From: Octopus sinensis
Lineage: Eukaryota
Direction: 5' to 3'
Length of the DNA: 64,000 bases
Assembly: GCF_006345805.1 (NCBI RefSeq)
Contig: NC_043010.1
Coordinates: 66,588,001 to 66,652,000, forward strand
How positions within the stretch are numbered: position 1 is the first letter of the stretch; the number at the start of each line of letters is the position of its first letter. This document shows positions 15,421-63,880 of the stretch, piece after piece. The position numbers were made by a program, and so were the translations under genes. The notes below the pieces were generated by a model. It did not search any database. It was not told the origin of the DNA and was given only the letters and a program-made list of their open reading frames with translations.

Positions 15421-15423
15421 ATC

Positions 15424-15455
<32 letters not shown>

Positions 15456-15717: not shown

Positions 15718-15748
<31 letters not shown>

Positions 15749-26464: not shown

Positions 26465-26499
<35 letters not shown>

Positions 26500-35897: not shown

Positions 35898-35965
35898 CAC
35901 CTGCAGAGGGACACGAACCCGCGACCCTCGGATTAAAAGTCTGATGCTCTACCGACTGAGCTATG
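35898..35965 (-). pseudogene. tRNA-Lys(UUU) pseudogene
   Basis: Minus strand reads TAGCTCAGTCGGTAGAGCATCAGACTTTTAATCCGAGGGTCGCGGGTTCGTGTCCCTCTGCAGGTG. The 5' acceptor strand is lost (TTGATCA cannot pair with TGCAGGT), and the anticodon stem and T-stem have mismatches. Confidence 0.8.
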
Positions 35966-38735: not shown

Positions 38736-38767
38736 ATGGCGTTCAAACGAAGATGTCTCAATTCCAG
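38736..38767 (+). CDS. SLF2: SLF2-like exon 1 (MAFKRRCLNS, phase 2; alternative ATG at 38753 gives MSQFQ, phase 0)
   Basis: aaaatATGGCG start context, strong donor CAG|GTAAGC, CpG-rich upstream region. Confidence 0.6.
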
Positions 38768-39905: not shown

Positions 39906-39940
<35 letters not shown>

Positions 39941-39969
39941 GTATATGTGTGTGTGTGTATATATATGTA

Positions 39970-40017
<48 letters not shown>

Positions 40018-43000: not shown

Positions 43001-45260
43001 AAACATAGAGGGGACAAACAAGGACAGACAAACGGATTAAGTCGATTACATCGACCCCGAAAGGATGAAGGGCAAAGTCGACCTCGGCGGAATTTGAACT
43101 CAGAACGTAACGGCAGACGAAATACCTATTTCTTTACTACCCACAAGGGGCCAAACACAGAGAGGACGAACAATGACAGACAAACGGATTAAGTCGATTA
43201 CATCGATCCCAGTGCGTAACTGGTACTTAATTTATCGACCCCCGAAAGGATGAAAGGCAAAGTCGACTTCGGCGGAATTTGAACCCAGAATGTAACGGCA
43301 GACGAAATACGGCTAAGCATTTCGCCCAGCGTGCTAACGATTCTGCCAGCTCGCTGCCTCATTATATAGAAACCTTAATTATGAATTCCAGTGGGGATAT
43401 GCATATTCTATATTTTATCTATCTGTCTGTCTTTATGTTTGTGTCTGTGTTTTGACATGATGTAATATCAGGCCAACCTCTTCAGAGTGTACTGGGTGCT
43501 TTTTACGTGGCACCACCAACTGTGGTGGTGGGGTGTGGTATTGAGGGACATGGCTATGTGTCAGATGATAAGTTAGAGCAGTGGTTTTCAACCAGTGTTC
43601 CGCGGAACCTTAGGGTTCTGCCAGTACAGTGCAGGGCTTCTGCAAGAAGTTACAAAACTGCTAAAATGGGCAGTAATTTTTAAGTCTCCTGTGCAGATAT
43701 GTGTGCATAAGACTATTAAATTATTGCACAGGGGTTCCTCGAGCCAGTGGAATGTTTCCTTGGGGTTCTGCTCAAGCAAAAAAGTTTGAAAAGTATGAAT
43801 AGGGTGTCTTGTGATAGAGGAGACACATGGCTACCTCAGTTAGGCAGAAGGAGAGAGGGAGAGGCAGCAAGCTGGCAGAAACGTTAGCACGCCGGGCAAA
43901 ATGCTTAGTGGTATTTTGTCTGCCATTACGTTCTGAGTTCAAATTCTGCCGAGGATAATGGAAGCTATCTTCTACCTCCTTGGGCATTTAGGGATATCTC
44001 ATAGCTTATAGTTGCTGCACATCTGCCTCACAGGACTACTTTGTCTGTTAACCTTCCTGTGATTCCACTGCACTTCTTTATTTTGCACTAGGGAAACTGT
44101 ATAGAATTTCTCCCTTCACTTATTTTACATATCAAGCTGAGTCATTTCCCTGAAAGGGTTGATTAATAATTTGTCTGCTTTTTTGTCTAATAGTATTTCG
44201 GTCTTTGCTGCATGTTTATGTGTTGTTATTAGTGACAAGGAAGAATATCTGGTTGTAGAAAACCTGCCATATCAAAATTTTGTTTGACCCATGCAAACAT
44301 GGTAAAATGGACATTAGAATAATAATAATAATAACAACAATAATAATAATAATAATAATGGTGGTGGGAGATCTGGTCTCGTGATGTCTATGGCCTTTAC
44401 AGATCCTTGGTGACTTGATGCCGTTAATGTTCTGCTTAAACTGTTGTAAGTCAGTGAATGCTGGGAAAATGTTCAGGGATGGAATTTTCTAGGGTTGATA
44501 TATATTGGAGAACTCAGCATAAGGGATAGTGCAAGGTCTGGAAGTGGAGGACAATAGGAGAGACAAGTCACAAGACAAGACATTTCTGAGGAACCAATGT
44601 CATTTTTACTTGTTCTAAAATAGGCAGAAACAAGAGACATTTTATATATATATATATATTGGCAAATTAAATTTAAATGTTGAAGTGAATCTAACGGTTT
44701 TTATATGTTTCTTAAATGGCTTATAAACACCTTCCATGCTGCAACTGTTTTAATTCCAGCACACAATCTCAGATCAGGTCACTTGCTATGCAAGTACATC
44801 TCCGTAATAATGTGTATATATATATATATATATATAGGTCTTTCACGCTATCTACCCGATAATTTCTTGTTAAGTTTTCCTTATTAAGAAGTTGTCCTTA
44901 ATTGCTAAATTTTTATTCCGAAAAAACTTTTCCTTTCCCGAAATGCAATTCGTAAAAGTCTGCCATTTACCGGATGTAATATATGTAAACCCACCCATGT
45001 GCTTCGTTGAAGTTGATCAGTTAGCTGCTCGGCTTGGACGAGGTGGGTTCGTTTATTTATGATACGTCCAGGCTTGCTGATGAATACAGAGGTATGAAAT
45101 CACAGGTGATACAAGTCCATATTTTTAAATGTCTTACTTTGAAAAATTGCATTCGGTGGGATTAGTAAAATTTTTGGTAGAAGTGACTAATTTTGTCCCT
45201 CTTAGCGTGTGGCATGTATGTATAATAATGCCCTCTATATATAAATATATATATATATAG

Positions 45261-45291
<31 letters not shown>

Positions 45292-48200
45292 ATGATTTCA
45301 GATATTTGTCTTAAACATTCAGACAAGCAAATTTATAATTCCGATGTATGACATGAGTTATTATTCCATTCAGATAACCACATATTTATATTAAGAGTCA
45401 GATGTTAAAAATATAGAAATATATAAGGGGTACCATGAAAGTAGAAAATATATTAAAGGAGGCAAGTGAAATATATTTAATATATTTTCTACTTTCATAG
45501 TACCCCTTATATATTCTTGGGTTTTTTATTTTTTATGTTTTTATTCTTATATTTCTATATTCGTAACATCTGACTCATAATATAAATATGTGGTTATTTG
45601 AATTGAATAATGCCTCATGTCATACATCTGAATTATGAATTTACTTGTCTGAATGTTTAAGACATTATGTGAAATTTTTATCGTACACCATTAAGAAGGG
45701 CACCCTGCCGTAGAAGCCATACCAAAGCAGACTACATCTTGGTGCCACTCTCTGGCTTACCAATTCCAGTCAAACTGTCTAGCCCATGCCAGCATGGAAA
45801 GCAGATGCTAAATGATGACATATATATATAGGCACAGGAGTGGCTGTGTGGTAAGAAGCTTGTTTCCCAACCACATGGTTCTGGGCTCAGTCCTACTGTG
45901 AGGCACCTTGGGGGCAAATGTGACTGAAAGAAAAAAAATATCAGAGTTGGTTTGTTTGACTAAAACCCTTGAAGGTGGTGCCTTTTATAACTGCACCCCC
46001 CCACACACACACACCAAAAAAAAAACTGAGATTGCTTGCAGGGTGACAGGTGTGGAATGTTAGTGGGAAACTATTTTGGCTTTTGCTAATGGAAACTTTC
46101 ATGGGATATTTTTGAAATTTGTAAAAGCTGTGTTGAAGATAAATTGAAATATGGTGATTATACCCTTATCAGTGGTCTTGTGGGTTTACTCTTTTACTTG
46201 TTTAAGTCATTTGACTGTGGCCATGCTGAAGCACCGCCTTTAGTCGAGCACATTGACCCCAGGACTTATTCTTTGCTGGACCGCTAAGTTACGGGGACGT
46301 AAACACGCCAACATCGGTTGTCAAGCGGTGTTGTGGGGACAAACACACACACACACATATATGTATATATATATATTGTGCGCGAGAAGACCCGGCAGGA
46401 CAATTGAGGCCATAACCCATGGCCCTACCTGGGACATAGTCAGTCCACCTGTGCATACCTTCCTTCTTGGGACACATAACTGACAGGTTGTTATCATCTG
46501 TATAGGACTGGACATTATTGGAATTGGTGACAAAGGGGTTGTTGAAGCAGAGGAAGAAGGGAGTGAAAGACAAAACTGAACTTGAAGTCATACCATTCAT
46601 TCTTTCTAGAAATCGAGTAGAGATGATTCATTTATCACTGTGGTCTTCTATTTGGAGCAAAACCTCCCTGAAAATTGAGAATCTATGTGTTTGTGTACCA
46701 GGTGCAAGTGAAAGTTTTAATGCCGTCAGAGCCAACAACTGCGTTTTCACCAAATTCTTGTGGAGGAGTGATCATCGGGGAGTGGCATTGGAGAGTAGGC
46801 CTCCAGTAGGTCTGGCTTTACAAAAACCATGCTGATTGACATTAATGAAATCCAGGAACTTGTCTGGCCATTTTTCATATCTCGTTGTAAACATATGAGT
46901 TAGAATTACAATGGATGCAGCTGAGAGACCATTTCCTGTTTTCAAGATCCAGTGGAAACGCGTGCAATTTGGGAGTTAAAGTAATCATTTTGAAGTAGTT
47001 GCACGTTCAGCTGGCTGTGAGTAAGCGAATTCAGTTGTTTCTGTGTTTTTACTTTGCAGGCATGATTGTCTGGCACCTGTGTCGGTGGCACATAAAAAGC
47101 ACCCACTACACTCATGGAGTGGTTGGCATTAGGAAGGGCATCCAGCTGTAGAAACACTGCCAGATCAGATTGGAGCCTGGTGCAGCCATCTGGCTTCCCA
47201 GACCCCAGTTGAACCGTCCAACCCATGCTAGCATGAAAAACGGACGTTAGGAAGGGCATCCAGCTGTAGAAACACTGCCAGATCTGACTGGCCTGGTGCA
47301 GCCTTCGGGCTTCCCAGACCCCAGTTGAACCGTCCAACCCATGCTAGCATGGAAAGCGGACGTTAAACGATGATGATGATGATATATACATACATACAAC
47401 GGGCTTCTTTCAGTTTTCGTCTACCAAATCCACTCACAAGGCTTTGGTTGGCCTGTGGCTATAGTAGAAGACACTTGCCCAAGGTACCACGCAGTGGAAC
47501 TGAACCTGGAACCATGTGGTTCGTAAGCAAGCTACTTAAAACAGGTAGAATATTTGGGCTGGATGTGTCTGGTTTAACTGCTAAAGTTTTAAAACAATAC
47601 TGGTAGGTCATTTGTAGCCCTTGACCTTTCTAATATGTGACATTCTCTCTTGTTTTGAGAGGAACCCGTTAATTTTGAAATGAATCCTCCTTTTCATATT
47701 TTCATGCAGGAAACTTTTCATTAAATTATGTTCCAGACAATATAACAAAGAAATTCCCTCCAATTTTTTTTTTTGTAATTATTATTTTCAAAATTTATTT
47801 CAAATTTCAAACATTTTTTTCATGAGGTTAGAATATAATTTTTATCTTTCTTTTTATTATGGCAAAGTTTGATTTGACTGCTGCAACTCTGTTGAGTGTG
47901 TGTGTGTTTGTGTATTCATAAATACAGGGAATGTATTTTTTTTTTTTTTGCTTGTTTTCCACTTTCAGTCACGAATCAATCTTGAAGTATTTTCGAGTTT
48001 GCCGTGATCCGTGTGAGAGATTTTATTGTCTTACATTTTGAAATAAGTTTCAGTGAGTTATTGTGGTAATACCATTAACTTTTCTAATGACATTATAATA
48101 ATACTACTAGTGCTGTTGCTGCTGCTACTACTACTACTACTAATAATAATAATAATAATTATGTTCAGTAATAATTTCATCTGTAAATAATACTGGTAAA

Positions 48201-51200: not shown

Positions 51201-54200
51201 ACGATCGGATGGTGCTTTTTACGTGCCACCAGCATGGAAGACAGTCAGGGCGGCACTGGCATCGGCCACATTCGGATGGTGCTTTTTATGTGCTACCGGC
51301 ATGGGGCTCACAACTACAATTTCCATTTGATTTGATTTTGACATTGCTGATGTTGATGTATTTTTGTAATTTATCAGTAGTAATACTAATTCATTACTAT
51401 GCTACTAGTGGTTTCGGTTTCTGGACTGTGCAATGCATTGTGTTCTTGAGGAAAACACTGCATTTGATATCACTCCAGTCTTCTCAGCTGGTAAAAATGA
51501 GTACAGTAACCCCTTACCATATCACGGTTCACCTATCATGTTTTATTATTTAAGCTTATGTTGTTTCCCCCGTGGTGTTGTTTTGCATTTATAATAAAAT
51601 AAATTTATACAAATTATAAAAATAAAAAAAATAAAAGTACTGTTTCTACTTTTTTACTCTTTTACTTGTTTCAGTCATTTGACTGTGGCCAAGCTGGAGC
51701 ACCACCTTTAGTCAAGCAAATCGACCCCAGGACTTAATTCTTTGTAAGCCTAGTACTTATTCTATCGGTCTCTTTTGCTGAACCGCTAAGTTACGGGTAC
51801 CATCCCTGTGCTCCCTATGGAGTGAGGAGGGTTAACCACTAGTTCTACTTGTAAATATCTTAAACAACCTAGGAGCCAATGCTTGTTTAATCCTTCAGTT
51901 TACTTTTATTGTTTGTATTGTTAGTTGTTTCTTATACAGCTAGGATGATGAATGCCACTGTTTTCTTCTCCTCTACAGTAACATCAAGCGACCTGTCTAC
52001 ACATGCAATACCAACTCTCTCATAGTCCGTCACCACCACTAGCAACAGTCCGACAATGGCCAGCAACTCCTTAAAATCCCGAAATAAAAAATCCGCTGAA
52101 GGTGAATATTATTTACTTGTTGTATACACCTCTCTTCATTTATCACTGATTCATTTATCACCGATTCATTTATCACTGATTCACTCATCACTGGTTCATT
52201 TATCACTGATTCATTCATCACTGATCTGGAATTACATGGTACACTCAATTGTGAACCATGTTAAGTTTAAGATAAATTGATCCGTGATAAATATGAGCTG
52301 GTGATCAATTCAAGATTCTGTTAGTGATATTTTTCTGTTCTTTTTTTATTATTTTTTTTTATTTACTGATCATATGTTACTCTTTACTCTTTCACTTGTT
52401 TCAGTCATTTGACTGAGGCCATGCTGGAGCATCACCTTTAGTCGAGCAAATCGACCCCAGGACTTGTTCATTGTAAGCCTAGTACTTATTCTATCGGTGT
52501 CTTTTGCCGAACCGCTAAGTTATGGGGACGTAAACACATCACCATCGGTTGTCAAGCGATGTTGGGATCAAACACAGATACACAAATATATACACACGCA
52601 TACATATATATACATATATACGATGGGCTTCGTTCAGTTTCTGTCTACCGAATCCACTTACAAAACTTTGGTCGGCCCGAGGCCATAGTAGAAGGCACTT
52701 GCCCAAGGTGCTACGCAGTGGTACTGAACCTGAAACCATGTGGCTGGTAAGCAAGCTACTTACCACACAGCCACTACTACGCCTATTAAATGTTTTTCTA
52801 AATATTTTTCCAAGATGTGAAACAATATCATCAAATGTGCTTAAACTGCTTGTGAGGTGTGTTGTTTTGGGTGAGTCAGGGGGACAACTTGGGGTCATGG
52901 AATGAAACCTATTTTACCTTTGTGTTCTGTGATTCATTTATCACTGATTCATTTAACATGCCGCTTTCCATTTTTTTTAAAACCGAACAGCTGTGATCAA
53001 CAAGCAGAGCTGTACTTAACAAAAGTTAAGTACCATTTTCAAAGTAATTGACCCTCCTCGTCTTTCAATATTTTAGGTCTTGTGCCTATCAAAATACAGT
53101 CATTAAAACAGATTTTAGTTAAAAATATTGTAATAAAAGGATTTTAAGCACCCAAAAATAACAATTCTATGCACTCCCAAATTCTTTTTTCTTTTTCCTA
53201 ACCTTGAAGTCCGTCTCTGAATTCCTCCCCTTATGTAGCTATGGTTACCTCTGTCTTAAAAGCTTCTTCATTTCTCTCCTCCAGATGATCACTCCCGAGA
53301 CAGCTCAGATTTATCAGTATCTGATGACAGTGGGTAAGTTTTTCACAATCAGATTACACAGTGTGGTGTCTTGATATTTGTTACTTATCTTTATTTTTAT
53401 TTTTACTAACCTTTGACCTTTGATCCTTCTGGTATCAGTCAAGGTATGAATAAATTCCTTTGCAAAAAGATAAAAAAATAGTGAAATGATAGGTGTAAGC
53501 ATGGCCTTGTTTAAAATCTACCTCATTCTCTTAACCATGTGATCTCTGGTTCAGTCCCACTGTGTGACACCTTGGGCAAGTGTATTCGACTACAGCCCCA
53601 AGTCGCCCAACCAAACCTTTATGAATGGATTTGGTAGGTAGAAACTGAAAGAAGCATGTGTGTGTATAATTTGTGAGTATAGCCTTGTCTTGACATCACA
53701 TGATGGTTGTAAACAAGCACCACCATCATACAAGTGGGGTTGTTTGTTTCTAATCTTCTGTGGAAATATGTCTGGCCATGTGAAATATCACCTTGCTTGG
53801 AGACATATGAGGGTTGGTGACAGAAGGGTATCCAGCTTTAGAGGATTGTTTGCCCAGGCAAATTCCATCTCTTTCATGCAAGCATGTAAGAGTGGGCATT
53901 AATTAAATGCTGATGATGTCAGAATTTGTAGGATGGTAGAGTGAATGCCATGCAGCATTTAAGTATTTCCTTGCACATTTCGAGTTCAAATCCTACAGGA
54001 GTTCATTTTGTCTTTTATCCTTCTGACTAGCACTATGACCCAGCAACGCCGGGTCATAGTGCTAGTGCATGCATATACAGAGCTTCGTGCATGCGCACAT
54101 ACACATGAGTACTGTCCAAATCTCCGACCAATCACATACAGCTAGCTGGCATTCAATTGGCGTATCAAGTTTCGGGCATTTTGATTGGGTTTTGGATAGA

Positions 54201-54882: not shown

Positions 54883-57800
54883 CACACACATGCATATATA
54901 TAATTCATATGCATATATAATATATATAATAGTTATATGTACATTCAAGGCTTTCTTTGTGCTTGTCTCATTTCAGGATGTTACAGTCTCGGTTGGATAA
55001 ATGTGAGGTATGTATTTATTACTTTGCTATGGAGTTCTGCACATTTTGTGTTTTATAGAATAGGTTTTGCTCAGAAAAATTTGGCACGTATGTGTGTGTG
55101 TGTGTGTTTTAAAATGTGGCATGGAATACTGCATGCGATATGTCAGGGTGGTGTATCGTGTCTTTTAGTGTGATATGGGGAGCTGTTAGTGTTGTGACAT
55201 GTATTAGAACATGATATAAGAGGCTGTGTTACAGTACAGTGGAATGTGGTGTGTTTTGCAGTTTGGCTTGGTGCCATGTATATTACAGAATAATGTGTTG
55301 TTTAACCCCAGGTCAATTCTGATCCAGCAGGCCTATAACCAAAGGCATTCCAGCTCTGACCATCTTGGGCAGCTTGTATCTAGGATAACATCATCCAGTA
55401 TGTCTCTCACTATTGATGACGATAGGGTTTAATTCAAGAGATAATTGACTACTATTTTTAGCAGGTCAAGCAACCATAGAAAGGTTCTCTTGTTGGCTTT
55501 ACAGTGTGTGACAGTATGAGGTGTTTTTCACTGCTAACACAAAAGTAAAGCACACTATTAACTTGCAGACCTTTAATATACTTGATAGTACATTATGGTT
55601 GCAAAACGAGATACTGTGGCTTTGCTAGCAGTTAATCTCTATGTGTGTGTGTGTGTGTGTGAATATATGTATGTAAATATGCATTTTTATAAGTGTACTA
55701 GTAATCGCTACACGTGCTTCTGCGCTGGTGGGGTGTGTATTAAGGCTATACTTAATACATAAATCCACCAGTACGTCCTCAGGCTATGTATATTATTATT
55801 TACGGGTAAATGTTAAAAATTAAAAGTTAAAAATCATATTAAAAATTAAAATTTCAAAACTATAAGTAAGATTACTTTACGACATAATCCTTCTTTTTCA
55901 AGTGCAAACTATATTCCTCATACACATTTATGAGGAATACAGCCACAATAGCACCTATAGCAGTACTACATGTGGATACACCAAGAACTAAGAATCTACC
56001 AAACAATACCACCTCCAAATGAACAGATAGGCCACACCTATGTAACACAAATCTCAAAATATAAAACACCTCAAAAATCCATTGATGGCCAGTTTCACGA
56101 GTATAGCTTTTCCTAATGCCAACCACTTAACAGAATGTACTGGGTGCTTTTTACATGTGTGTTTGTGTGTGTATGTGTATGTGTGCTTGTGTTTGTTCTT
56201 CATTGTCTTGAAATTATAGCATAGCTGAGGTATACACACACACATGCACGTGTCTAGCTTCTTTCAGTTTCTATCAGACAATTCCACTCAGTTTTGGTCA
56301 GCCCAGATGTATAGAAGAAAACTCTTGCCCAGAGTTCAACATCACTTGATAGTCGTAAATGAGTGTCACTGTCATATAAGCAGTGTCATTCATATCCATG
56401 AAAACATGTCCCATCATGAAGAAACATTACCTTACTTGGAACCAAGTGGGGGCGGGCAACAGGAAGGGTCACTGGCTGTAGAAAATCCGCTTCTATAAAT
56501 TTCATCTGGCTTGGTGCCATGTATATTACAGAATAAAGTGTTGTTTAGCCCCCTCATTTCCCAAGCATGGGAAATCATCATCATCATCATCATCATTTAA
56601 CGTCCGCTTTCCATGCTAGCATGGGTTGGATGGTTCAACTGGGGTCTGGAAAGCCCGAAGGCTGCACCAGGCCAGTCAGATCTGGCAGTGTTTCTACAGC
56701 TGGATGCCCTTCCTAACGCCAACCACTCCATAAGTGTAGTGGGTGCTTTTTATGTGCCACCGACACAGGTGCCAGACGAGGCTGGCAACGGCCACGCTTG
56801 GATGGTGCTTTTTACGTGCCACCAGCACGGAGGCCAGTTGATGTGGTGCTGGCTATGGCCACGTTCGGATGGTTCTCTTATGCGCCACCAGCACTGGTAC
56901 CACAACTACAAATTCCATTGATGTTGATCGATTTCGATTTTGATTTGATTTTTTGATTGAAAGTGAATGCTAAAGCAGTGATGGCGATACATGTGTATAA
57001 TGTTTTTGTTTCATTTATTTATTTTTTTTCTTTTCTTTGTTTGCAGCTGAAGGACAGTGGGGTGCGGCTAGATGTGAAACCAAAGAGCAAGATAACCCTC
57101 ACATTAGATGTGCTGGTTGCAGACAAGATTCAGCAGGTAAATTACCATATAGTTGTGGCCATAGAAAAATCTACCTTTATGATTTGTGTCTTATTCATGT
57201 AAGCATGGAAATGTAGATATTAATGATGATGATGATGATGCTATGTATCATCTTAAACATTGTTTACCTGTCTTATTTTGCTCACCAGACATTCTAATTA
57301 ATGATCTCACCTTTCTCATTTTATTAGGATGAGCTGGACAGGATGAACAGAGAGCTTCAGGTTTGCATCTCCCTTTTCTCACCCTCTCTATTTTTTTTCA
57401 TCATCTTCTCCCACCACCTCTTTTCTCTCTATGTCTATCCTTCTTTTCCTTCTGCCCTTCTTCATCTCCCCCTCTCTCTCCATTTTCTTTACTCTCTTCA
57501 CATTACCTCCCCCCACTCCTCTTTCTCTCATGTCTCTGCTACCATTGTATCAACCATTTCCATCACCATAACTAATGGAATTTCTTATGAAATATACTGT
57601 TCTTCTTTCATTTAATTTTAAAAATTGTTAACAATACAGACATTTATTAAAGTAACTCCTGTATTTGATGGCATATACGATGCACATTTTTCCCCCAAAA
57701 TGTTTCAAAAAAATCACTCTGGGACTTATATGCAAAGTTGTGCCTTGCATAAGCTAATTTTGTCCCTCGTGCTCACTACTTTTCGGCTAATTTTAATCCA

Positions 57801-60800
57801 AACAGTATCTTCTACCGAGCCTGACTCCATAATACTATTATTTACTTAAATATCATTTTAATAACTTATTGACTTATGTGGAGGTGCAATGGCCCAGTGG
57901 TTAGGGCAGCAGACTCGCGGTTGGAGGATAGTGGTTTTGATTCCAGACCGTGCATTGTGTGTGTTTATTGAGCAAAAACACCTAAAAGCTCTGCGAGGCT
58001 CCGGCAGGGGGTGGTGGCGACCCCTGTTGTACTCTTTCACCCCAACTTTCTCTCACTCTTTCTTTCTGTTTCTTGAGCAATGCTTCAATGGACTGGCATC
58101 TCGTCCAGCTGGGGGGAACACATGCGCCGCAGAAACTGGGAAACCGGGCCCATGAGCCTGGCTAGCCTTGAAAAGGGCGCATGAATAAAATAAAAATTGA
58201 CTTATGTAATATTCAAAGATTACTTTAAATATTACATTCTTTAACTCTTTATCATTTAAACTGGCCATATCCGGCTCAATTATTATACCTGTTTTATGTA
58301 CAGACGGGCCATATTCCACATCTCACACCTACCCTGCAATGTCATACTAAAAATAAACAAGCACATCATTGAAATCTCAACGCAGAAAGATAATCTGTGA
58401 GTCAATTCAAAGCAATGGGAATAAACAAGCATTACATTAGACAGTGTAATCTAAATGCTAAAGGGGTAATGTACTAAAATGAAGGCACGTCTTCCTGGTT
58501 AGGGTATTCAGTTCATGATCGTAAGGTCGTGGGTTCAACTCCTGGCGATGCATCGTGTCCTTGAGCAAGACACTTTATTTCGTGTTGCTCCAGTCTACTC
58601 AGCTGGTAAAAATTAGTTGTGCCTGTATTTTTCAAAGGACCATGTCACATTCTGTGTCATGTCAAATCTCCTTGAGGACTACGTTATGGGTACACATGTC
58701 TGTGGAGTGCTCAGCCACTTGCATGTTAATTTCACAAGCAGGCTGTTCTGTTGAGCGGATCAACCATCTTACAAACAATAACTCTGAGCATCTTTTCGAA
58801 CTCCACCCATCTAACACCCATGGACATATTTACAAAGTCAGAAAACAGCACAGCTCCCATGACTTTAGGAAACATTTTTTCACGCTGAGAGTTGCTGAAG
58901 CATGGAACAAACTGCCGGCATCAGTTGTTAGTTGTCGGAGCACTGCATCCTTCAAAACTTCCATGCTTTCTGAGATTCGCCAACACTACACTTGATTTTC
59001 TCCCCTCCATACACACAAAAGCATGTATCTGACTCATACACTGTTCACTTTCCAGACATTCGTACATTACTGCATATACTTTATATGCACTTTTGACAAG
59101 TTGTGGTGCACCTGAGCACTGTATACAATAATTTTATTATTATTAACTGGAACCCTCGTTGTCGTAACCGACGGAGTGCCAATAGTGTTGTATTAAAAAT
59201 TTTTACCCCGAATATGCACAACCGGAATTGAGGTGCATCTAATATGCCTGTGCATCTTTAATGCCATCAAGTACAATAACCCTCTTGATATTAAAGCTGA
59301 GGTTTGGTACTTAAGTTAAAATGTTCTGACATAAAACTATCCTGGAATGCTTTAATTTTGCTTGTAAACCCTTTCAAAATTGGCAATTTGGCGTCAGAGA
59401 ACTCAAGATGGTGCTCAAGTGGTTTGGTATGTCATGGGTAAAACCTTAATGCGTGGTTTTGCACCAATCCTAGCTTGTCTCACTCCTTTTATGTCACTAG
59501 TATGTCTCCACATACGACTACCACCATTCACCAACGTCTTTATTTCAATTCCAGGCTGATTTGAAGTGTGGTGGTGTTAGCAACATGTTAGCTGAATTAA
59601 ACGAACCAGGTGAGTATGTAATGAGTGTGTGCAGTAATTGCCATACGGCCACACACACCCATGATGGGCTTCTTTCAGTTTCCATCCACCAAATCCACTC
59701 AACACGGCTTTGTTCAGCCTGGGGCTGAAGTAGAAAATACTTGCTCAAGATGGCATGCAGTGGGATTGAACCCAAGACCATTTATGTAGACATGTGTCAT
59801 GAAGACATGGTCTCATGTTTGTTCCTGCTGTGTGGTACTGTGGATAGGTGTGTTATGTTAGTTTTGGGCTGGCCAGTGCCTTCCGAGTGGAATTTGTCGA
59901 CAAAAACTGTAGGAAGCTTGTCTTTAATTATAGTGTGTGTGTATGATAAAAATTTAAAACGTTTGAGAAATATGAAATTTTTTTACTTTGAATTCCACCA
60001 TTAAAAATGAATTGTGTGTGTGTTGGCATTGTTAACCTGTTGTGTTTAAACAATGCCTCTATCAACACAATAGTAGACTTGTCCAGCCATTGACCTGTTT
60101 CAGGCAATGAGGTGGCAGAAATGTTAGCACACCGGGCAAAATGCTTAGCAGTATTTTGTCTGTCTTTACATTCTGAGTTCAAATTCTGCCATGGTCTATT
60201 TTGCCTTTCATCCTTTCAGGGTTGATAAATTAAGTACCAGTTGCGTACTGGGGTTGATTTAATCGACTGGTGTCCTTCCCATAGAGAGAACGAGAGATTA
60301 CAATTTATTGTATTACACTTGTCTTCTTCTCATACACATAAAGAGAAATATATTCACATAAGTCAGCGTTAGGGCAGCCAACTGGCAGAATCATTAGCAC
60401 TCTGGGTGAAATGCTTAGCAGTATTTCATCTGTCTTTACATTCTGAGTTCAAATTCCACCGAGGTCGACTTTGCCTTTCATCCTTTCAGGGGTCAATAAA
60501 TTAAGTACCACTTGTGTACTAGGGTCGATCTAAACGACTGGCCTCCTTCCCAAATATTTTGGGGCCTTGTGCCTAGAGTAGAAACGGATAAAAGTCAGCA
60601 TTGAACCAGCAATACCAAATAGGTGGCACCAGAATGTCTTGTATCCTGGTTGACTCTGATGTATGTTTGAAAGAGCAAAGTGCTGTGTAGTTAGCTCAAA
60701 ACGTGGATTTCATGAATTTAAAACCATCTTCACCATCTGCATGGTTAAAATGGTGAAGAAGTTTCTACACAAGCATCCACTGTTGGTCATTCAGTTATAT

Positions 60801-63800
60801 TATCTGCATATCTCTTTACCTCCTTACAGATGGAATGTTACCAGAACACAAGAAGAAACTGGAAATGGTAAATATGTTTTTTGTACTGTTTTTTTGTCCC
60901 TCTAATGGCATAAATTTGTTTAAAAATGTATTTTATTTATTTTTGTATTTTGGAAGTGAAGAACAAGGTATTTTTGTTCTTGTTGCTGTTTAATGCCATT
61001 TCAGCATTTAAACTGGCCATATCCGGCCAAAAATATTCTGCCTGTTTTATGCTCAAACTGGCCAGATCTGGTCTCTCGCACCAACCCTACAATATCGTTT
61101 TAAAAATTAACAGCTACTTCATCAAAATCTCAAAGCTACAAGATTAATGAATGATTAGTTCAAAACAATTTGGATACAAAAAGCATTAATTTTGGCAGAA
61201 TAATGCGAACACTATAGGGTTAATACCATTTCAGCTCTGATTTACCAAACTTGTGATCCAAAGCTTTCTAGCTGTGACCATCCCATCTAATTTCAAAGAC
61301 ATAACATATCTATGAGTACATTATTTAATATGTCATATCTATAAAACCATGTATAACTGTGTCTGTAAACTCTCGTTACTAGATACTTATAAACCCATAT
61401 TAAAGGTAAATCTGCTGTTACAGGTGTAGCACATGGTGATAAAATGTCTGCTTCCCAACCACATGATTTCAGGTTCAATCCCAGTGCATAGCACCCTCTG
61501 TGGATTTGGTTGAAGGAAATTGAAAGAAGCTCTTTGTATGTTTGTGTGAGTGTTGCTGTATCCTTTCTTTGACATAGTTTGACAGTTGTAAAGAAATATC
61601 ACCATTATGCACGAGGTGTCCTTCATATTCAGTCTTCTGAGACATGTCTGATCGTGAGGAAATATCACCTTACTTGGAAACAGGTGAGGGTTGGCAACAG
61701 GAAGGGCATCTGATTGTAGAAAATCCACCTCAGCAAAATCTACCTGACCCATGCAAGCATGGAAAAGGGGACGTTAAACAATATCTAAAGCGACATTATT
61801 GATATATCTGTAGTGGTAGCTAGATAGTTGAATGATCTCCCTTGCAAGAAAGATTATAGAGTAACCTCCCTTCCTAAGTTTCTTGAAGCATCTGTGTCAT
61901 GAGATATGATTCTTAATTATTCAAGAAGCGTAGCATTTCTCTTGGAAGTTTCTAGAATGTCTAGCGTTCCATTAATAAAAACAGCTTACTAACCCTGAAC
62001 GTGGCCGTTGCCAGCGCTGCCTCAACTGGCCTCCGTGCCAGTGGCATGTAAAAAGCACCAACTGATCGTGGCCGTTGCCAGCCTCGCCTGGCACGTAAAA
62101 AGCACCCACTACACTCTCAGAGTGGTTATGAAGGGCATCCAGCTGTAGAAACACTGCCAGATCAGACTGGCCTGGTGCAGCCTCCTGGCCTCCCAGACCC
62201 CAGTTGAACCGTCCAACCTATGCTAGCATGGAAAGCAGACGTTAAACGATGATGATGATGATGTGCTGGTGAATTTTGAAAAGAATGTAAGTGTACCTCA
62301 AGTGGAAAAAGGTTGTGGGGCACTGCTAATGCCACAGCTATGTATCTACTGTTACATCTATAAATTATATAATTATATGTCATATTGAGAAACTCATCCT
62401 ATTCTATAGCTATAAAACCATGCTAAAAATATATGCCAACACCTGTTATTTCTCCATAACACATGCACACACACAAACACACACACATTCTTGTTGTCTC
62501 AAAATACTTTGATCTTTCTTATTTCAGCTGAGCAATTTCCCACAGCACAACATTAACGAACTACCACCATGGGAGACACTGTTTGAAGCCTCCAATTATT
62601 GTTGCCTCTTCAACTCTGACCTGCAACTCAGCCATATAAAGTTTCTGCCTGGGAACAGTAAAATAGATAATACACTGGCAAACACAGAAGGTGAGGGGAC
62701 GGGGTTTCACATTAATGGTTTGCTGTATTTTTGTGGTGTGGTATGTGTGTTCTTGTGTGTGAGGTGAAGAGGTCTTTAAGCTAGTGTTATGTTCCTAAAA
62801 CTAGCTTAATGATAACTAAGTTATTTTACTAAATTCTTTGTTATATTTAAAGTAATTGAAAGAAACACAGAGCATCTCAACAGAAATATGGTAATGAAAG
62901 GGTTAAAATATATAAAAGAGAAACAATTCTTAACCCTTTCGATACCAACCCGGCTGAAACCAACTCTGGCTCTGTGTACAAATGTCTTGTTTTCATAAGT
63001 TTTGAATTAAAATCTTCCACCAAACCTTAGTCACAGTTTATGTCCCTAACACTAGCTGAATGATAACCAAGTTATTTTACTAAATTCTGTGTTATATTTA
63101 AAATTAATTGAAAGAAACTCAGAGCATCTCAAAAGAAATATGGTAACAAAAGGGTTAAAAAGATATGTACTGGAGTCGATTTGTTCAACTGAAAAATTTG
63201 TCAAGGTGGTACCACAGTCTTATGACTGAAACAAGGAATGGGTAAAGATGTTAGTAAGAGTGAGAGAGGTAATAGCAGGAAGGTGGTTCTGGGTGAATGA
63301 GTGAGTGGCTGAGTTCGCTCACTTGCTCTTTCTTTCTTTCCTTCCTTCTTTCTCTCCTTTCTTTCTTTCTTTCTTTCCTTCTTTGTTTCCTTCTTTCTTT
63401 CTTTCCTTCTTTCTTTCTTTGCTTCTTTCTTTCCTTCATTCCTTCTTTCTTTCATTTCTTCTTTCCTTCTTTCTTTCTTTCCTTCATTCCTTCTTTCATT
63501 CATTCCTTCTTTCCTTCTTTCTTTCCTTCCTTCTTTCTTTCTTTCCTTCTTTCTTTCTTCTTTCTTTCTTTCTTCTTTCCTTCCTTCCTTCTTTCTTTCT
63601 TTCCTTCTTTCTTTCCTTCTTTCTGTCCTTCTTTCCTTCCTTCTTTCTTTCTTTCCTTCTTTCTTTCCTTCCTTCTTTCCTTCCTTCTTTCTTTCTTTCT
63701 TTCTATGTCTGTCCTCAAATGAATAGTTTTGTTCATTCTTTGACATACTCTTCACTTAATTCATTGAAATCTTCTCAGGTACTGAGCAGCTGGAATTCAT

Positions 63801-63880
63801 CTTGAAGTCTGATATCCTGCGCATTGTGTGGTATGCCGTGTCCAACAAAAATTTGGTCCTTCGATGGCTGTTCTTCTTAA
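38736..63880 (+). CDS. SLF2: SLF2/FAM178-like gene (SMC5-SMC6 localisation factor, CANIN domain), 11 exons, 3' end beyond the window
   Basis: Phase-consistent GT-AG exons give ...TLDVLVADKIQQDELDRMNRELQADLKCG..DGMLPEHKKKLEML..INELPPWETLF..LFNSDLQL..TEQLEFIL..LVLRWLFFL. This aligns by eye with human SLF2 as I recall it (TLERLV..LDELQKQLQEDIRQG..DGLLEEHKEFLKKF..IPDHHPGEEIF..IFNQYTLDL..VLKWLFRM). Confidence 0.85.
39332..39630 (-). mobile_element. Non-autonomous Helitron
   Basis: Minus strand A|TC...CCCGAGCAACGCCGGG hairpin...CTAG|T (canonical termini, AT target); ACAG microsatellite near the 5' end. Confidence 0.85.
40802..41734 (+). mobile_element. Internally deleted mariner (DD34D) relic with both TIRs, interrupted by an RTE 3' fragment at 41465-41694
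   Basis: The frame 40966-41451 reads AKEGLHPRKVLLSVW*D...FHQDNAQTHTA...PHSPYLLDIVPSDYHLF...LPDRWESIVENKGEY with 34 residues between the Asp residues and 3 internal stops. Imperfect TIRs ttggatcatcccataa / ttatgatctgacccaa are flanked by TA. Confidence 0.88.
41948..42168. mobile_element. piggyBac-type MITE, second family
   Basis: TTAA-CCCTTTAGTGTT...AACACTAAAGGA-TTAA; opposite-orientation copies at 58245-58465 and 60994-61219. Confidence 0.75.
42803..43338 (-). repeat. MetaSINE-like trimer/concatemer
   Basis: Three tail-to-body units joined at gaaatacctatttctttact. Confidence 0.85.
44319..44600 (-). mobile_element. LINE 3' end remnant with (ATT)n tail
   Basis: Minus strand FPAFTDLQQFKQNINGI followed by a short UTR and an ATT repeat. 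Confidence 0.5.
46470..46900 (-). mobile_element. Degenerate LINE reverse-transcriptase fragment (L2/Crack/Daphne-like)
   Basis: Minus-strand pieces VNQHGFCKARPTGGLL, EFGENAVV and SSVLSFTPFFLCFNN...VQSYTDD correspond to the QHGFR, LDxxKAFD and GSVLSP..YADD motifs. Confidence 0.65.
47070..47382 (+). mobile_element. RTE 3' UTR fragment with a tandem duplication of its last ~120 bp
   Basis: aggaagggcatccagctgtag...acggacgtt occurs twice, joined at cgttag microhomology. Confidence 0.75.
47969..48012 (+). CDS. SLF2: SLF2-like exon 2 (SHESILKYFRVCRDP)
   Basis: Strong acceptor ttttgcttgttttccactttcag|, donor CGT|GTGAGA; phase 2 to phase 1 bridges exons 1 and 3. ESILKYFR resembles the SLF2 N-terminal QSIIDFFK motif as recalled. 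Confidence 0.5.
48490..49270 (-). repeat. Tandem array of four ~163-bp MetaSINE-like units plus a head
   Basis: Unit starts at 48565, 48728, 48891 and 49051; near-identical and sharing private variants. Confidence 0.9.
49440..50508 (-). mobile_element. Helitron-like element with three ~148-bp internal tandem repeats (50016-50457)
   Basis: 5' TCTTTATATATA end plus a CTGT/GT microsatellite as in the other Helitrons; units start at 50016, 50165 and 50313. The left boundary is uncertain. Confidence 0.6.
50990..51360 (-). mobile_element. RTE 3' UTR fragment
   Basis: Family match. Further copies at about 11005-11207, 23093-23330, 45700-45818, 56577-56950 and 61995-62262. Confidence 0.75.
51979..52101 (+). 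CDS. SLF2: SLF2-like exon 3 (TSSDLSTHAIPTLS*SVTTTSNSPTMASNSLKSRNKKSAE) with in-frame TAG at 52023-52025
   Basis: Acceptor ttttcttctcctctacag|, donor GAAG|GTGAAT; 123 nt, phase 1-1. Confidence 0.65.
52136..52225 (+). repeat. 15-bp tandem repeat (attcatttatcactg) x6
   Basis: Lies directly after the exon 3 donor; about 1.5 more copies near 52932. Confidence 0.85.
53285..53333 (+). CDS. SLF2: SLF2-like exon 4 (DDHSRDSSDLSVSDDSG)
   Basis: tttctctcctccag| ... GG|GTAAGT; phase 1 to 2. Confidence 0.85.
53500..53920 (+). mobile_element. Older SINE with a CORE-like head and a ggttggcgacaggaagggcatcc-type 3' part
   Basis: Related copies at about 20680-20960, 56240-56510 and 61420-61790. Confidence 0.55.
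54027..54415 (-). mobile_element. Non-autonomous Helitron with an extended terminal palindrome
   Basis: 5' A|TCTCTATATATA at 54415, CTAG|T at 54027, 16-bp perfect stem. Confidence 0.75.
54977..55007 (+). CDS. SLF2: SLF2-like exon 5 (MLQSRLDKCE)
   Basis: ctcatttcag| ... GAG|GTATGT; phase 2 to 0. Confidence 0.85.
57047..57136 (+). CDS. SLF2: SLF2-like exon 6 (LKDSGVRLDVKPKSKITLTLDVLVADKIQQ)
   Basis: Long pyrimidine tract + ttgcag|, donor CAG|GTAAAT; phase 0-0. Confidence 0.9.
57328..57360 (+). CDS. SLF2: SLF2-like exon 7 (DELDRMNRELQ)
   Basis: ttttattag| ... CAG|GTTTGC; phase 0-0. Confidence 0.85.
57880..58195 (+). mobile_element. Full-length tRNA-headed SINE with a 12-bp TSD
   Basis: Head GGAGGTGCAATGGCCCAGTGGTTAGGGCAGC, A-rich tail, ATTGACTTATGT at 57868-57879 and 58196-58207. 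Confidence 0.85.
58765..59144 (+). mobile_element. 5'-truncated CR1-type LINE 3' end inserted into a V-like SINE
   Basis: Translates LFELHPSNTHGHIYKVRKQHSSHDFRKHFFTLRVAEAWNKLPASVVSCRSTASFKTSML (CR1 C-terminal motif); (ATT)n tail; AAC duplicated at 58762-58764 and 59145-59147; the host SINE resumes exactly. Confidence 0.85.
59555..59609 (+). CDS. SLF2: SLF2-like exon 8 (ADLKCGGVSNMLAELNEP)
   Basis: ttcaattccag| ... CAG|GTGAGT; phase 0 to 1. Confidence 0.88.
60830..60867 (+). CDS. SLF2: SLF2-like exon 9 (DGMLPEHKKKLEM)
   Basis: ctccttacag| ... ATG|GTAAAT; phase 1 to 0. Confidence 0.9.
62528..62690 (+). CDS. SLF2: SLF2-like exon 10 (LSNFPQHNINELPPWETLFEASNYCCLFNSDLQLSHIKFLPGNSKIDNTLANTE)
   Basis: ctttcttatttcag| ... 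GAAG|GTGAGG; 163 nt, open frame, phase 0 to 1. Confidence 0.92.
62783..63154. mobile_element. Second piggyBac-type MITE pair (partial copy to 62902, full copy 62934-63154)
   Basis: Same family and same spacer as 28571-29043. Confidence 0.85.
63320..63705 (+). repeat. (CTTT/CCTT)n polypyrimidine microsatellite
   Basis: ~385 bp that is almost entirely C/T, in the intron before exon 11. Confidence 0.95.
63779..63880 (+). CDS. SLF2: SLF2-like exon 11 (GTEQLEFILKSDILRIVWYAVSNKNLVLRWLFFL)
   Basis: cttctcag| ... TAA|GTAGGT; VLRWLF matches SLF2 VLKWLF as recalled. Confidence 0.9.

What the first reader, a model, noticed from the sequence alone, without database searches (positions are those of the whole stretch)
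51979..52101. In-frame UAG inside an otherwise intact exon of the SLF2-like gene: edited stop, poison exon or null allele
Seen: exons 1-11 join in phase, and exon 3 (123 nt, phase 1-1) is open Ser/Thr-rich sequence on both sides of a single TAG at 52023-52025 (..PTLS*SVTTT..). Established: coleoid cephalopods recode mRNA extensively by ADAR, UAG is the favoured ADAR triplet, and UAG to UIG reads as Trp; SLF2 is a conserved genome-stability gene. Inference, four options: (a) an editing-dependent stop rescue that gates SMC5/6 recruitment; (b) a symmetric poison exon, since skipping keeps the frame and inclusion would trigger NMD; (c) the TAG is itself an alternative acceptor used with a phase-0 donor (47996, or the MSQFQ start at 38753), or translation starts at ATG 52056; (d) a nonsense allele or assembly error. 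I found no convincing editing-complementary sequence by eye.
Basis: partly seen in the sequence, partly recalled or inferred. Interest (0 to 1): 0.75.

Follow-up and report, generated by a model that had tools for sequence, protein, structure and literature searches.

The report
Stop-bearing optional exon in octopus SLF2
A 123-base exon of the Octopus sinensis SLF2-like DNA-repair gene carries one in-frame stop codon between two conserved coding parts, and it most likely is an optional exon that switches the full-length protein off or shortens it, although a faulty reference allele cannot be excluded.

Summary
The window is Octopus sinensis (GCA_006345805.1, CM016872.1).

Homology supports the gene model on both sides of exon 3:
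- Exons 6-11 match molluscan SLF2-like proteins (102 bits) and Pfam CANIN (44.6 bits against a cut-off of 25).
- Exons 1-2 encode the family's conserved N-terminal motif. Octopus has MAFKRR..ESILKYFR; other molluscs have MKRK..QCITKFFK.

I first read the TAG as an ordinary 5'-UTR stop ahead of ATG 52056. The exon 1-2 homology rejects that reading.

Exon 3 has these properties:
- Its splice sites are strong, and its length is a multiple of three, so skipping it keeps the frame.
- Its in-frame translation is unusually Ser/Thr-rich (P about 2e-4 within the window).
- An ATG in optimal Kozak context lies 30 nt after the TAG.
- The densest YCAY (Nova-type) cluster of the whole window lies 35-117 nt past its donor.
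- I found no double-stranded partner for the TAG.

Best reading (confidence about 0.45): a regulated, frame-preserving cassette exon that acts as a poison or restart exon. Rivals are a nonsense allele or assembly error (0.25), constitutive inclusion with restart (0.1), a never-spliced decoy (0.1) and editing rescue (0.07). RNA and DNA reads would decide between them.

The parts
38736..38767 (+). Coding part of exon 1 (the 5' end of the exon is unknown). It starts at ATG in context AAAATATGGCG, encodes MAFKRRCLNS plus two bases (AG), and ends at donor CAG|GTAAGC.
   Evidence: Donor score 11.9, rank 3 of 3759 GT sites. CpG observed/expected is 1.1-1.2 at 38.4-38.9 kb against a window mean of 0.55. 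The KRR after the Met matches the family's N-terminal MKRK.
47969..48012 (+). Exon 2 (44 nt, phase 2 to 1). It encodes (S)HESILKYFRVCRDP and carries the core of the conserved N-terminal motif.
   Evidence: SILKYFR aligns with Q[CS]ITKFFK of molluscan SLF2-like proteins and QSI[TI]DFFKP of vertebrate SLF2. The core pattern occurs only 5 times in 128,000 six-frame residues of the window, and one of those is here. Acceptor and donor both score 5.7.
51979..52101 (+). Exon 3, the finding: 123 nt, phase 1 to 1, A/C-rich. It encodes (L)TSSDLSTHAIPTLS*SVTTTSNSPTMASNSLKSRNKKSAE.
   Evidence: Acceptor score 10.0 (rank 9 of 3402) and donor 8.0 (rank 48 of 3759). The sequence is unique in the window. Composition is A .36, C .33 with 5 CpG, against T-rich flanks. 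In-frame S+T is 18 of 40, P = 1.7e-4. No homologue covers it.
52023..52025 (+). The in-frame TAG: codon 41 of the reading frame that starts at ATG 38736.
   Evidence: It ends 76 nt before the exon 3 donor, with at least 8 exon junctions downstream.
52056..52058 (+). In-frame ATG in optimal Kozak context (ACAATGG), 30 nt after the TAG. It is a possible restart or second start that would give MASNSLKSRNKKSAEDDHSRDSSDLSV...
   Evidence: Only 84 of 1208 ATGs in the window (7%) have A at -3 and G at +4. The reading frame from here runs through exons 4-11.
52003..52074 (+). Small out-of-frame reading frame inside exon 3 (23 codons, ATG in weak context cacATGc) that overlaps ATG 52056.
52135..52225 (+). 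Six tandem copies of a 15-nt unit (TTCATTTATCACTGA) in intron 3. They carry 14 YCAY motifs lying 35-117 nt past the exon 3 donor.
   Evidence: This is the densest YCAY cluster in the 64-kb window: 14 per 100 nt, against a mean of 1.7 (sd 1.5) and a next-best of 10.
52271..52292 (+). Inverted copy of the 15-nt repeat. It can pair with several repeat units as a 22-nt imperfect hairpin. It does not reach the TAG.
   Evidence: pairs I3, I4, I6, I7; 77-86% complementary.
53285..53333 (+). Exon 4 (49 nt, phase 1 to 2). It encodes DDHSRDSSDLSVSDDSG, the acidic Ser/Asp patch.
   Evidence: Acceptor 10.7 (rank 4) and donor GTAAGT 8.8. The BLASTP alignment to Haliotis SLF2-like starts here at residue 20. 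Homologues carry an acidic SDDD/DLE patch upstream of the FSLD motif.
54977..55007 (+). Exon 5 (31 nt, phase 2 to 0). It encodes (G)MLQSRLDKCE.
   Evidence: It is the best candidate that restores the phase between exons 4 and 6. Acceptor 6.3, donor 8.7. The spacing fits the Haliotis alignment.
57047..57136 (+). Exon 6 (90 nt). It encodes LKDSGVRLDVKPKSKITLTLDVLVADKIQQ, which contains the FSLDxLLAE-type motif.
57328..57360 (+). Exon 7 (33 nt). It encodes DELDRMNRELQ.
59555..59609 (+). Exon 8 (55 nt). It encodes ADLKCGGVSNMLAELNEP.
   Evidence: Its donor scores 13.2, the best in the window. It aligns with L[KR]xGGF of homologues.
60830..60867 (+). Exon 9 (38 nt). It encodes (D)GMLPEHKKKLEM.
62528..62690 (+). 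Exon 10 (163 nt). It encodes LSNFPQHNINELPPWETLFEASNYCCLFNSD..., the start of the CANIN domain.
   Evidence: tblastn against scallop SLF2-like proteins gives E = 7e-5. A local profile of molluscan sequences gives E = 3.5e-8.
63779..63880 (+). Exon 11 (102 nt). It encodes (G)TEQLEFILKSDILRIVWYAVSNKNLVLRWLFFL. The gene continues beyond the window.
   Evidence: (E = 4.4e-5).

Best explanation
Exon 3 is an optional, frame-preserving cassette exon of the Octopus sinensis SLF2-like gene, and the TAG in it is genuine and is read as a stop.

When exon 3 is skipped, exon 2 joins exon 4 (48012 to 53285). One uninterrupted reading frame then links the conserved N-terminal motif (MAFKRR..ESILKYFR) to the acidic patch and the CANIN domain.

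When exon 3 is included, translation from ATG 38736 ends after 40 codons at the TAG. That stop lies 76 nt before the next exon junction. The message is then either removed by nonsense-mediated decay or restarts 30 nt further on at ATG 52056. A restart would give a protein that lacks the N-terminal motif but keeps the acidic patch and the CANIN domain.

The YCAY repeat just past the donor is the likely handle through which a Nova-type splicing factor promotes inclusion, for example in neurons.

Shown here: the exon model, the phases, homology on both sides of exon 3, the stop, the ATG context and the YCAY cluster.

Inferred: that exon 3 is spliced in at all, that it is alternative, its fate when included, and any role for Nova.
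For: - The eleven exons give a 253-codon frame with a single stop.
- Exons 6-11 align with a profile of molluscan SLF2-like proteins at 102 bits, E = 1.6e-33, and with Pfam CANIN at 44.6 bits against a cut-off of 25. The BLASTP alignment to Haliotis SLF2-like begins in exon 4.
- Exons 1-2 carry the family's N-terminal motif. The Met + KR[KRH] + core pattern is found nowhere in the contiguous six-frame translation of the window.
- Exon 3 is 123 nt, so skipping it keeps the frame. The skipped product is printed.
- Its splice sites are strong: acceptor rank 9 of 3402 and donor rank 48 of 3759.
- The TAG ends 76 nt before the donor. By established knowledge, that is beyond the 50-55 nt rule for nonsense-mediated decay.
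- ATG 52056 has the A(-3)/G(+4) context seen in only 7% of ATGs in the window.
- The top YCAY cluster of the whole window lies 35-117 nt past this exon's donor. YCAY clusters within 200 nt of splice sites direct Nova-dependent inclusion or skipping (PMC2014790). Nova-regulated decay exons are known (PMC3552424).
Against: - No transcript evidence could be reached, so neither inclusion nor skipping of exon 3 has been seen.
- The frame is Ser/Thr-rich on both sides of the TAG, including the 10 codons between the TAG and the ATG (18 of 40, P = 1.7e-4). A long-standing poison exon has no need for that. It fits better with an exon that is, or recently was, translated straight through.
- Cassette exons usually have weaker splice sites than these.
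- The YCAY density comes from one tandem repeat, so it is a single event, and Nova regulation has not been shown in cephalopods.
- The YCAY motifs are 7-8 nt apart, which is looser than the strictest Nova cluster definition (PMC2014790).
Confidence: 0.45

Rival explanations
1. Nonsense allele or assembly error. Exon 3 is an ordinary constitutive coding exon that encodes a short Ser/Thr-rich linker. The TAG would then be a variant of the sequenced individual, or a consensus error, that differs by one base from a sense codon.
For: - The in-frame translation is Ser/Thr-rich before and after the TAG, P = 1.7e-4. This matches the Ser-rich linkers of homologues, some of which sources name 'serine-rich adhesin for platelets-like'.
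- The splice sites look constitutive.
- It is the only stop in 253 codons.
- The stop is a single-base neighbour of CAG, TGG, TCG, TAC and TAT.
Against: - The prior for a stop-creating variant or substitution error in one given exon is low.
- The site is not in a homopolymer.
- This reading leaves two features as coincidences: the optimal-context in-frame ATG 30 nt downstream and the YCAY cluster.
- It cannot be tested here, because no reads and no other Octopus genome were reachable.
Confidence: 0.25
2. Constitutive exon with a fixed stop. Exon 3 is always included, so the gene's first reading frame is a 40-codon leader peptide. The working protein is made only by restart at ATG 52056, and the N-terminal motif is being lost in this lineage.
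For: - ATG 52056 is in optimal context, 30 nt after the stop. That short spacing follows a short upstream frame, which by established knowledge favours re-initiation.
- The splice sites are strong.
- The human SLF2 fragment solved with SIMC1 (PDB 7T5P chain B, 539 residues) matches the C-terminal 505 residues, so the C-terminal part can fold without the N-terminus.
Against: - The N-terminal motif in exons 1-2 is still intact and recognisable. That would not be expected if it had been untranslated into the main protein for long.
- Such a message would be a standing target for nonsense-mediated decay.
Confidence: 0.1
3. Decoy exon. 51979-52101 is never spliced into mature mRNA. The TAG is plain intron sequence, and the only message joins exon 2 to exon 4.
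For: - No homologue covers exon 3.
- Other top-scoring acceptors in the window (29571, 29793, 31802) are probably decoys.
- 40% of 40-codon windows have at most one stop.
Against: Several features coincide here: a strong acceptor, a good donor, a length that is a multiple of three, a sharp change of composition exactly at the splice sites, and frame-specific Ser/Thr richness. A rough joint chance is well below 1e-3.
Confidence: 0.1
4. Editing-dependent stop rescue. ADAR converts UAG to UIG, which is read as Trp. Full-length protein containing exon 3 would then be made only from edited messages.
For: - UAG is the preferred ADAR triplet (established knowledge).
- UAG-to-UGG stop-loss editing that joins adjacent reading frames is already handled as a known class in coleoid transcriptomes (PMC8382921).
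- The stop lies between conserved coding parts, and the frame looks coding on both sides.
Against: - No inverted repeat of 14 nt or more touches 52000-52050 within 50500-53500.
- The exon folds no better than shuffled sequence, z = +1.1.
- In the pre-mRNA, A52024 has a best-partner probability of 0.2.
- In the spliced mRNA it joins only a 3+3 bp helix with exon 6.
- Trp would be odd in a Ser/Thr linker.
- By inference, a repair gene needed in dividing cells would depend on editing that is strongest in neurons.
Confidence: 0.07

Closest known systems
Poison (PTC-carrying) cassette exons that couple alternative splicing to nonsense-mediated decay, including Nova-regulated cryptic decay exons (PMC3552424)
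   Same: - The exon is flanked by coding exons.
- It carries an in-frame stop more than 55 nt before the next junction.
- Its length is a multiple of three, so skipping restores the frame.
- A YCAY cluster lies within 200 nt of the donor.
   Different: - Alternative use has not been shown.
- The splice sites are strong.
- The sequence still looks like coding sequence on both sides of the stop.
- An optimal ATG follows the stop, so inclusion may yield a shortened protein rather than only decay.
- No poison exon is known to me for SLF2.
SLF2 / FAM178A, the CANIN-domain (Nse6-like) family (Pfam PF14816; human SLF2 in PDB 7T5P)
   Same: - The first 154 of 370 CANIN profile positions are matched.
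- The upstream FSLDxLLAE-type motif, the acidic patch and the N-terminal KRK..QxITKFFK-type motif are all present, in the same order as in molluscan and vertebrate members.
   Different: - The linker between the N-terminal motif and the acidic patch is 0-41 residues here. In the other molluscs retrieved, the sequence preceding the conserved region runs to roughly 250-2800 residues.
- The rest of the domain lies outside the window.
UAG-to-UGG stop-loss A-to-I recoding in coleoid cephalopods (PMC8382921)
   Same: The triplet is UAG, the organism is a coleoid, and the stop separates two open in-frame stretches.
   Different: No double-stranded structure is predicted around the site, and no RNA evidence is available. 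Most known cases were called from transcript data, not from a genomic stop inside a conserved frame.
Upstream reading frame followed by re-initiation at a nearby downstream AUG
   Same: When exon 3 is included, a 40-codon frame ends 30 nt before a strong AUG in the same frame.
   Different: The 'upstream frame' here begins with the family's conserved protein N-terminus, so it is not a mere leader.

Membership tests
SLF2 / CANIN family (PF14816) | Match to the CANIN domain profile above Pfam's gathering score | tested here: met
   The spliced 202-aa product scores 44.6 bits against a cut-off of 25 (E = 1.3e-11). Residues 61-200 match profile positions 12-154 of 370.
SLF2 / CANIN family (PF14816) | Collinear similarity to named SLF2-like proteins of related phyla | tested here: met
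   Profile of 10 molluscan sequences: 102 bits, E = 1.6e-33. BLASTP to Argopecten SLF2-like: 36% identity over 151 aa, E about 1e-21.
SLF2 / CANIN family (PF14816) | Conserved N-terminal basic + Q[CS]I[TI]xFFK motif at the protein start | tested here: met
   Octopus MAFKRRCLNSSHESILKYFR against MSKRKLSQGLQCITKFFK (Mytilus), MKRKSSTGLQCISKFFK (Haliotis) and RNQSITDFFKP (vertebrates). The short-profile score alone is weak: 6.5 bits, rank 5 of 2384 segments.
SLF2 / CANIN family (PF14816) | Complete CANIN domain and binding to SLF1/SIMC1 and SMC5/6 | not testable with these tools
   The gene runs off the window after exon 11. The human C-terminal 505 aa have no match in the window (best E = 4.8).
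Poison cassette exon (alternative splicing coupled to decay) | Coding exons of the same reading frame on both sides | tested here: met
   Homology exists upstream (exons 1-2) and downstream (exons 4-11).
Poison cassette exon (alternative splicing coupled to decay) | Skipping preserves the frame, and inclusion brings an in-frame stop more than 50-55 nt before a downstream junction | tested here: met
   The exon is 123 nt. The TAG ends 76 nt before the donor. The skipped frame is open.
Poison cassette exon (alternative splicing coupled to decay) | Both included and skipped transcripts exist, and the included form is stabilised when decay is blocked | not testable with these tools
   No transcript data were reachable. 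The protein collection lacks this genome's proteins, and spliced products may not be looked up.
Nova-regulated exon (YCAY RNA map) | YCAY cluster within 200 nt of the regulated exon's splice sites | tested here: met
   14 YCAY motifs lie at 52136-52218, the top cluster in the window. The rule is as stated in PMC2014790.
Nova-regulated exon (YCAY RNA map) | Nova binding and Nova-dependent change of inclusion | not testable with these tools
   This needs CLIP, a knock-down or a minigene. I did not check whether O. sinensis has a Nova orthologue.
Coleoid A-to-I stop-loss recoding site | Edited adenosine embedded in a double-stranded RNA structure | tested here: not met
   There is no complementary sequence of 14 nt or more, the fold z-score is +1.1, and the best helix is 3+3 bp.
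Coleoid A-to-I stop-loss recoding site | A in DNA, G in cDNA at the site | not testable with these tools
   No reads were available.
Ordinary 5'-UTR in-frame stop ahead of the start codon | Sequence upstream of the stop is non-coding leader | tested here: not met
   This was my first reading. Exons 1-2 encode the family's conserved N-terminus in the same frame, so the stop interrupts a coding frame.

The most novel reading that the evidence does not exclude
The genomic UAG is converted to a Trp codon by ADAR in a tissue- or state-dependent way. Editing would then decide whether the N-terminal (PIP-box-like) motif of the SMC5/6 loader subunit stays physically joined to its CANIN domain. That would make this an editing-gated genome-stability factor.
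Probability: 0.07. Interest if true: 0.75.

Novelty: new member of a known kind. Interest (0 to 1): 0.42.

Why it matters
SLF2 brings the SMC5/6 complex to damaged or foreign DNA. If an optional stop-bearing exon lies between its conserved N-terminal motif and its CANIN domain, octopus cells would have a simple switch. They could turn the full-length protein off, or swap it for a form without the N-terminal motif, possibly in neurons.

It would also be a clean test locus. One RT-PCR across exons 2-4, plus sequencing, distinguishes splicing control, RNA editing and a faulty reference allele.

If the TAG is only an allele or an error, the value is practical: it flags a reference-genome defect in a conserved gene.

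The very short linker of the octopus protein, compared with other molluscs, is a separate point of interest for the SLF2 family.

Tried and rejected
1. The TAG as an ordinary in-frame stop in the 5' UTR, with the protein starting at ATG 52056. I held this through about. I rejected it when exons 1-2 proved to encode the family's conserved N-terminus.

2. Searches of the large protein collection with peptides from exons 3/4 and exons 6/10 found nothing. I first took this to mean the exons were not annotated as coding. One search shows that the collection does not hold this genome's own proteins, so those negatives carry no weight.

3. Exact look-ups of window reading frames around the site, to find other individuals' contigs, returned nothing on record.

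4. tblastn of the human SLF2 C-terminus against the window gave only chance hits. That part of the gene lies beyond the window.

5. TAG as an alternative acceptor, and donor 47997, both score poorly. No other in-frame AG exists inside exon 3 after the TAG.

6. I looked for a large upstream N-terminal exon between the zinc-finger gene and exon 3 and found none. No other Ser/Thr-rich exon-like stretch exists between exons 1 and 4.

7. The search for an editing-complementary sequence was negative.

8. Literature searches for SLF2 in octopus or in editing tables and for the run SRR23477409 found nothing. The 2017 Cell editing paper is not held.

9. No cephalopod SLF2 was among the best 150 of 447 profile hits, so the orthologous codon could not be compared.
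Full report
**Observation**

An AG at 51977-78 follows a long pyrimidine tract, the 123-nt segment runs 51979-52101, and the donor at 52102 is GTGAAT. TAG lies at 52023-25 in the frame that reads ..PTLS*SVTTT... All three frames of the segment carry a stop before the ATG at 52056: TAA 51979, TAG 52023 and TAG 52040. One stop in 40 codons is not unusual by itself, because 25% of all 40-codon windows on this strand have exactly one. The finding therefore stands or falls with the gene model around it.

**Source**

The complete 788-codon C2H2 zinc-finger reading frame at 24211-26577 is on record in Octopus sinensis assembly GCA_006345805.1, chromosome record CM016872.1. The fetched locus is identical to window 14211-36577. 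It is the only called gene across window 14.2-36.6 kb, so the gene studied here does not extend upstream over that stretch. That zinc-finger protein is absent from the large protein collection. My early negative searches with exon peptides therefore say nothing about how the gene is annotated.

**Gene identity and exons 4-11**

I verified the human SLF2 C-terminus against PDB 7T5P chain B, with 505 of 505 residues matching. It has no match in the window. I used it to collect vertebrate SLF2 proteins, aligned 13 of them and searched 1.84 billion representatives with the profile.

Among the hits are molluscan proteins, several of which their sources name SMC5-SMC6 complex localization factor 2-like: Argopecten, Mytilus, Haliotis and Saccostrea, with related hits from Ylistrum and Solemya under other names. 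tblastn of all retrieved proteins hit the + strand at 62.5 and 63.8 kb. A local profile of ten molluscan sequences then picked out collinear small exons.

All the exons have canonical AG and GT sites:
- exon 4: 53285-53333
- exon 5: 54977-55007
- exon 6: 57047-57136
- exon 7: 57328-57360
- exon 8: 59555-59609
- exon 9: 60830-60867
- exon 10: 62528-62690
- exon 11: 63779-63880

The spliced product aligns with the molluscan profile at 102 bits, E = 1.6e-33. It matches Pfam CANIN at 44.6 bits against a cut-off of 25. It aligns with Argopecten SLF2-like at 36% identity over 151 residues. The alignment to Haliotis begins in exon 4, at the acidic patch DSSDLSVSDDS, and homologues carry a comparable acidic patch upstream of the FSLD motif.

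**Exons 1 and 2, and a change of mind**

Up to this point the simplest reading was that the TAG is a normal in-frame stop in a 5' leader and that the protein starts at ATG 52056. That ATG sits in ACAATGG context, which only 7% of ATGs in the window share.

- Exon 1 runs from ATG 38736 (context AAAATATGGCG) to donor CAG|GTAAGC at 38767. The donor ranks 3 of 3759. It lies in a patch with CpG observed/expected of 1.1-1.2, against a window mean of 0.55.
- Exon 2 is 47969-48012.

Together they encode MAFKRRCLNSSHESILKYFRVCRDP. The retrieved family members share a short N-terminal motif:
- MSKRKLSQGLQCITKFFK in Mytilus
- MKRKSSTGLQCISKFFK in Haliotis
- MKRKHPEKGLQSITKFFK in Saccostrea
- RNQSITDFFKP near the start of vertebrate SLF2

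The octopus peptide has the same layout: Met, a basic KRR, six residues, then ESILKYFR. The core pattern occurs five times in 128,000 six-frame residues of the window, and one of those is in exon 2. The combination with Met and KR[KRH] occurs nowhere in contiguous sequence. A short-profile score alone is weak, at 6.5 bits and rank 5 of 2384 segments.

I accept exons 1-2 as coding. The leader reading is rejected, because the TAG interrupts a reading frame that is conserved on both sides. With all eleven exons the 253-codon frame has this one stop only. Without exon 3 the frame is fully open and reads ..VCRDP-Y-DHSRDSSDLSV...

**Anatomy of exon 3**

- It is unique in the window.
- Its acceptor ranks 9 of 3402 and its donor 48 of 3759.
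- Its composition changes at the splice sites to A .36 and C .33 with five CpGs, against T-rich flanks.
- Its in-frame translation has 18 Ser/Thr in 40 residues. Only 1.7e-4 of all 40-codon windows in six frames reach that, and the only + strand stretch with 20 or more overlaps this exon.
- The richness holds on both sides of the TAG, including the ten codons SVTTTSNSPT between the TAG and the ATG.
- A 23-codon out-of-frame reading frame (52003-52074) overlaps ATG 52056.
- Just past the donor lie six copies of a 15-nt unit (52135-52225). They make the densest YCAY cluster of the whole window: 14 per 100 nt, against a mean of 1.7, sd 1.5 and a next-best of 10.
- An inverted copy at 52271-52292 can pair with the repeat but does not reach the TAG.

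For editing I found no support:
- No inverted repeat of 14 nt or more touches 52000-52050 within 50.5-53.5 kb.
- The exon folds no better than shuffles, z = +1.1.
- A52024 has a best-partner probability of 0.2 in the pre-mRNA.
- In the spliced mRNA it forms only a 3+3 bp helix with exon 6.

The TAG as an acceptor scores -1.7 and would be out of frame with exon 2.

**Weighing the explanations**

Three facts must be explained together. The exon looks real and regulated. It looks like coding sequence on both sides of the stop. A strong in-frame ATG follows the stop.

A regulated cassette exon explains the following:
- the length that is a multiple of three;
- the stop position, 76 nt before the donor, which is decay-competent;
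- the ATG, as a restart giving a protein without the N-terminal motif;
- the YCAY cluster, since YCAY clusters within 200 nt of splice sites direct Nova-dependent splicing (PMC2014790) and Nova-controlled decay exons are known (PMC3552424).

It does not explain the coding look of the sequence, unless the exon was an ordinary linker exon until recently.

A nonsense allele or consensus error explains the coding look but leaves the ATG and the YCAY cluster as coincidences. It also has a low prior.

Editing explains the coding look and the choice of TAG, and it belongs to a class already recognised in coleoids (PMC8382921). It lacks any structure, and it would make a repair gene depend on editing.

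My confidences are:

| Explanation | Confidence |
|---|---|
| Optional stop-bearing cassette exon | 0.45 |
| Nonsense allele or assembly error | 0.25 |
| Constitutive inclusion with restart only | 0.10 |
| Never-spliced decoy | 0.10 |
| Editing rescue | 0.07 |

None of these can be settled without reads.

**Comparison with what is known, and novelty**

The gene is a member of the SLF2/CANIN family as far as the window allows. Its linker is unusually short: 0-41 residues between the N-terminal motif and the acidic patch. In the other molluscs retrieved, roughly 250-2800 residues precede the conserved region. No large upstream exon exists between the zinc-finger gene and exon 3.

The exon works like a poison or restart cassette exon, which is a known kind. 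Membership is only partly testable here. An editing-gated stop would be the most novel reading that remains open.

**What led nowhere**

- Exact look-ups of local reading frames found nothing.
- Literature and supplement searches for SLF2 in octopus found nothing.
- The 2017 Cell editing paper is not held.
- No cephalopod orthologue was among the 150 listed profile hits.

Noticed in passing
window 24211-26577 (+): A complete single-exon reading frame of 788 codons. It has about ten tandem ~25-residue N-terminal repeats (..EEKSLPYSFVLNTGNSSGVKSSEG..), eleven C2H2 zinc fingers and a poly-Asn tail. It lies on the same strand, 12 kb upstream of SLF2-like exon 1. This gene identified the window as Octopus sinensis CM016872.1.
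   Followed up: partly
window 38736-53333 (exons 1-4): The octopus SLF2-like protein has almost no linker between its N-terminal KRR..SILKYFR motif and the acidic patch and CANIN region: 0-41 residues. Other molluscan and vertebrate members have hundreds to thousands of residues there.
   Followed up: partly
N-termini of retrieved proteins P0189, P0191, P0193, P0230, P0172, P0155, P0199 and vertebrate SLF2: A short motif, basic KRK then Q[CS]I[TI]xFFK, is conserved from molluscs to mammals at or near the SLF2 N-terminus. It resembles a PIP-box but is one residue shorter between Q and the hydrophobic position. Several molluscs also have isoforms with a different, longer N-terminus, which suggests alternative first exons are common in the family.
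   Followed up: partly
window 52285-52300 and 53301-53316: A 16-nt stretch of intron 3 is 94% complementary to sequence inside exon 4 (CAGCTCAGATTTATCA), 1 kb away. It could pair across the intron, but in an AT-rich 3-kb region it may be chance.
   Followed up: no
window 38731-38741: The start codon of exon 1 sits in AAAATATGGCG, which resembles the YY1 site (AAnATGGCG) often found just downstream of transcription starts. Together with the local CpG excess, this points to a promoter near 38.5-38.7 kb.
   Followed up: no
window 35904-35965 (-): An Rfam tRNA match (42.9 bits) that ARAGORN does not call as a tRNA gene. It is probably a tRNA-derived SINE head. Related SINE-like repeats (..GWTVQLGSGKP..AFYVPP.. 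when translated) recur through the window, and 42% of the window matches another part of itself.
   Followed up: no
window 41014-41355 (+): Open stretches resembling a mariner-type transposase remnant (..DNAQTHTA.. / ..DYHLFYSLQNHL..) in the intron between exons 1 and 2.
   Followed up: no
window 63201-63805: A purine-rich simple repeat in intron 10 that is open in several frames on both strands. It gives long artificial K/E/R-rich and S/F/L-rich reading frames.
   Followed up: no
window 14001-16000: A 2-kb stretch with G+C of only 0.20, far below the rest of the window (0.33-0.42).
   Followed up: no
locus L002 (Logan SRR23477409 contig, 2864 nt): A transcript contig of unknown organism encoding an 852-aa CANIN protein (P0206). 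It shares the exact hexapeptide SSDLSV with octopus exon 4, at a similar distance upstream of the FTLDGLVAD motif.
   Followed up: partly
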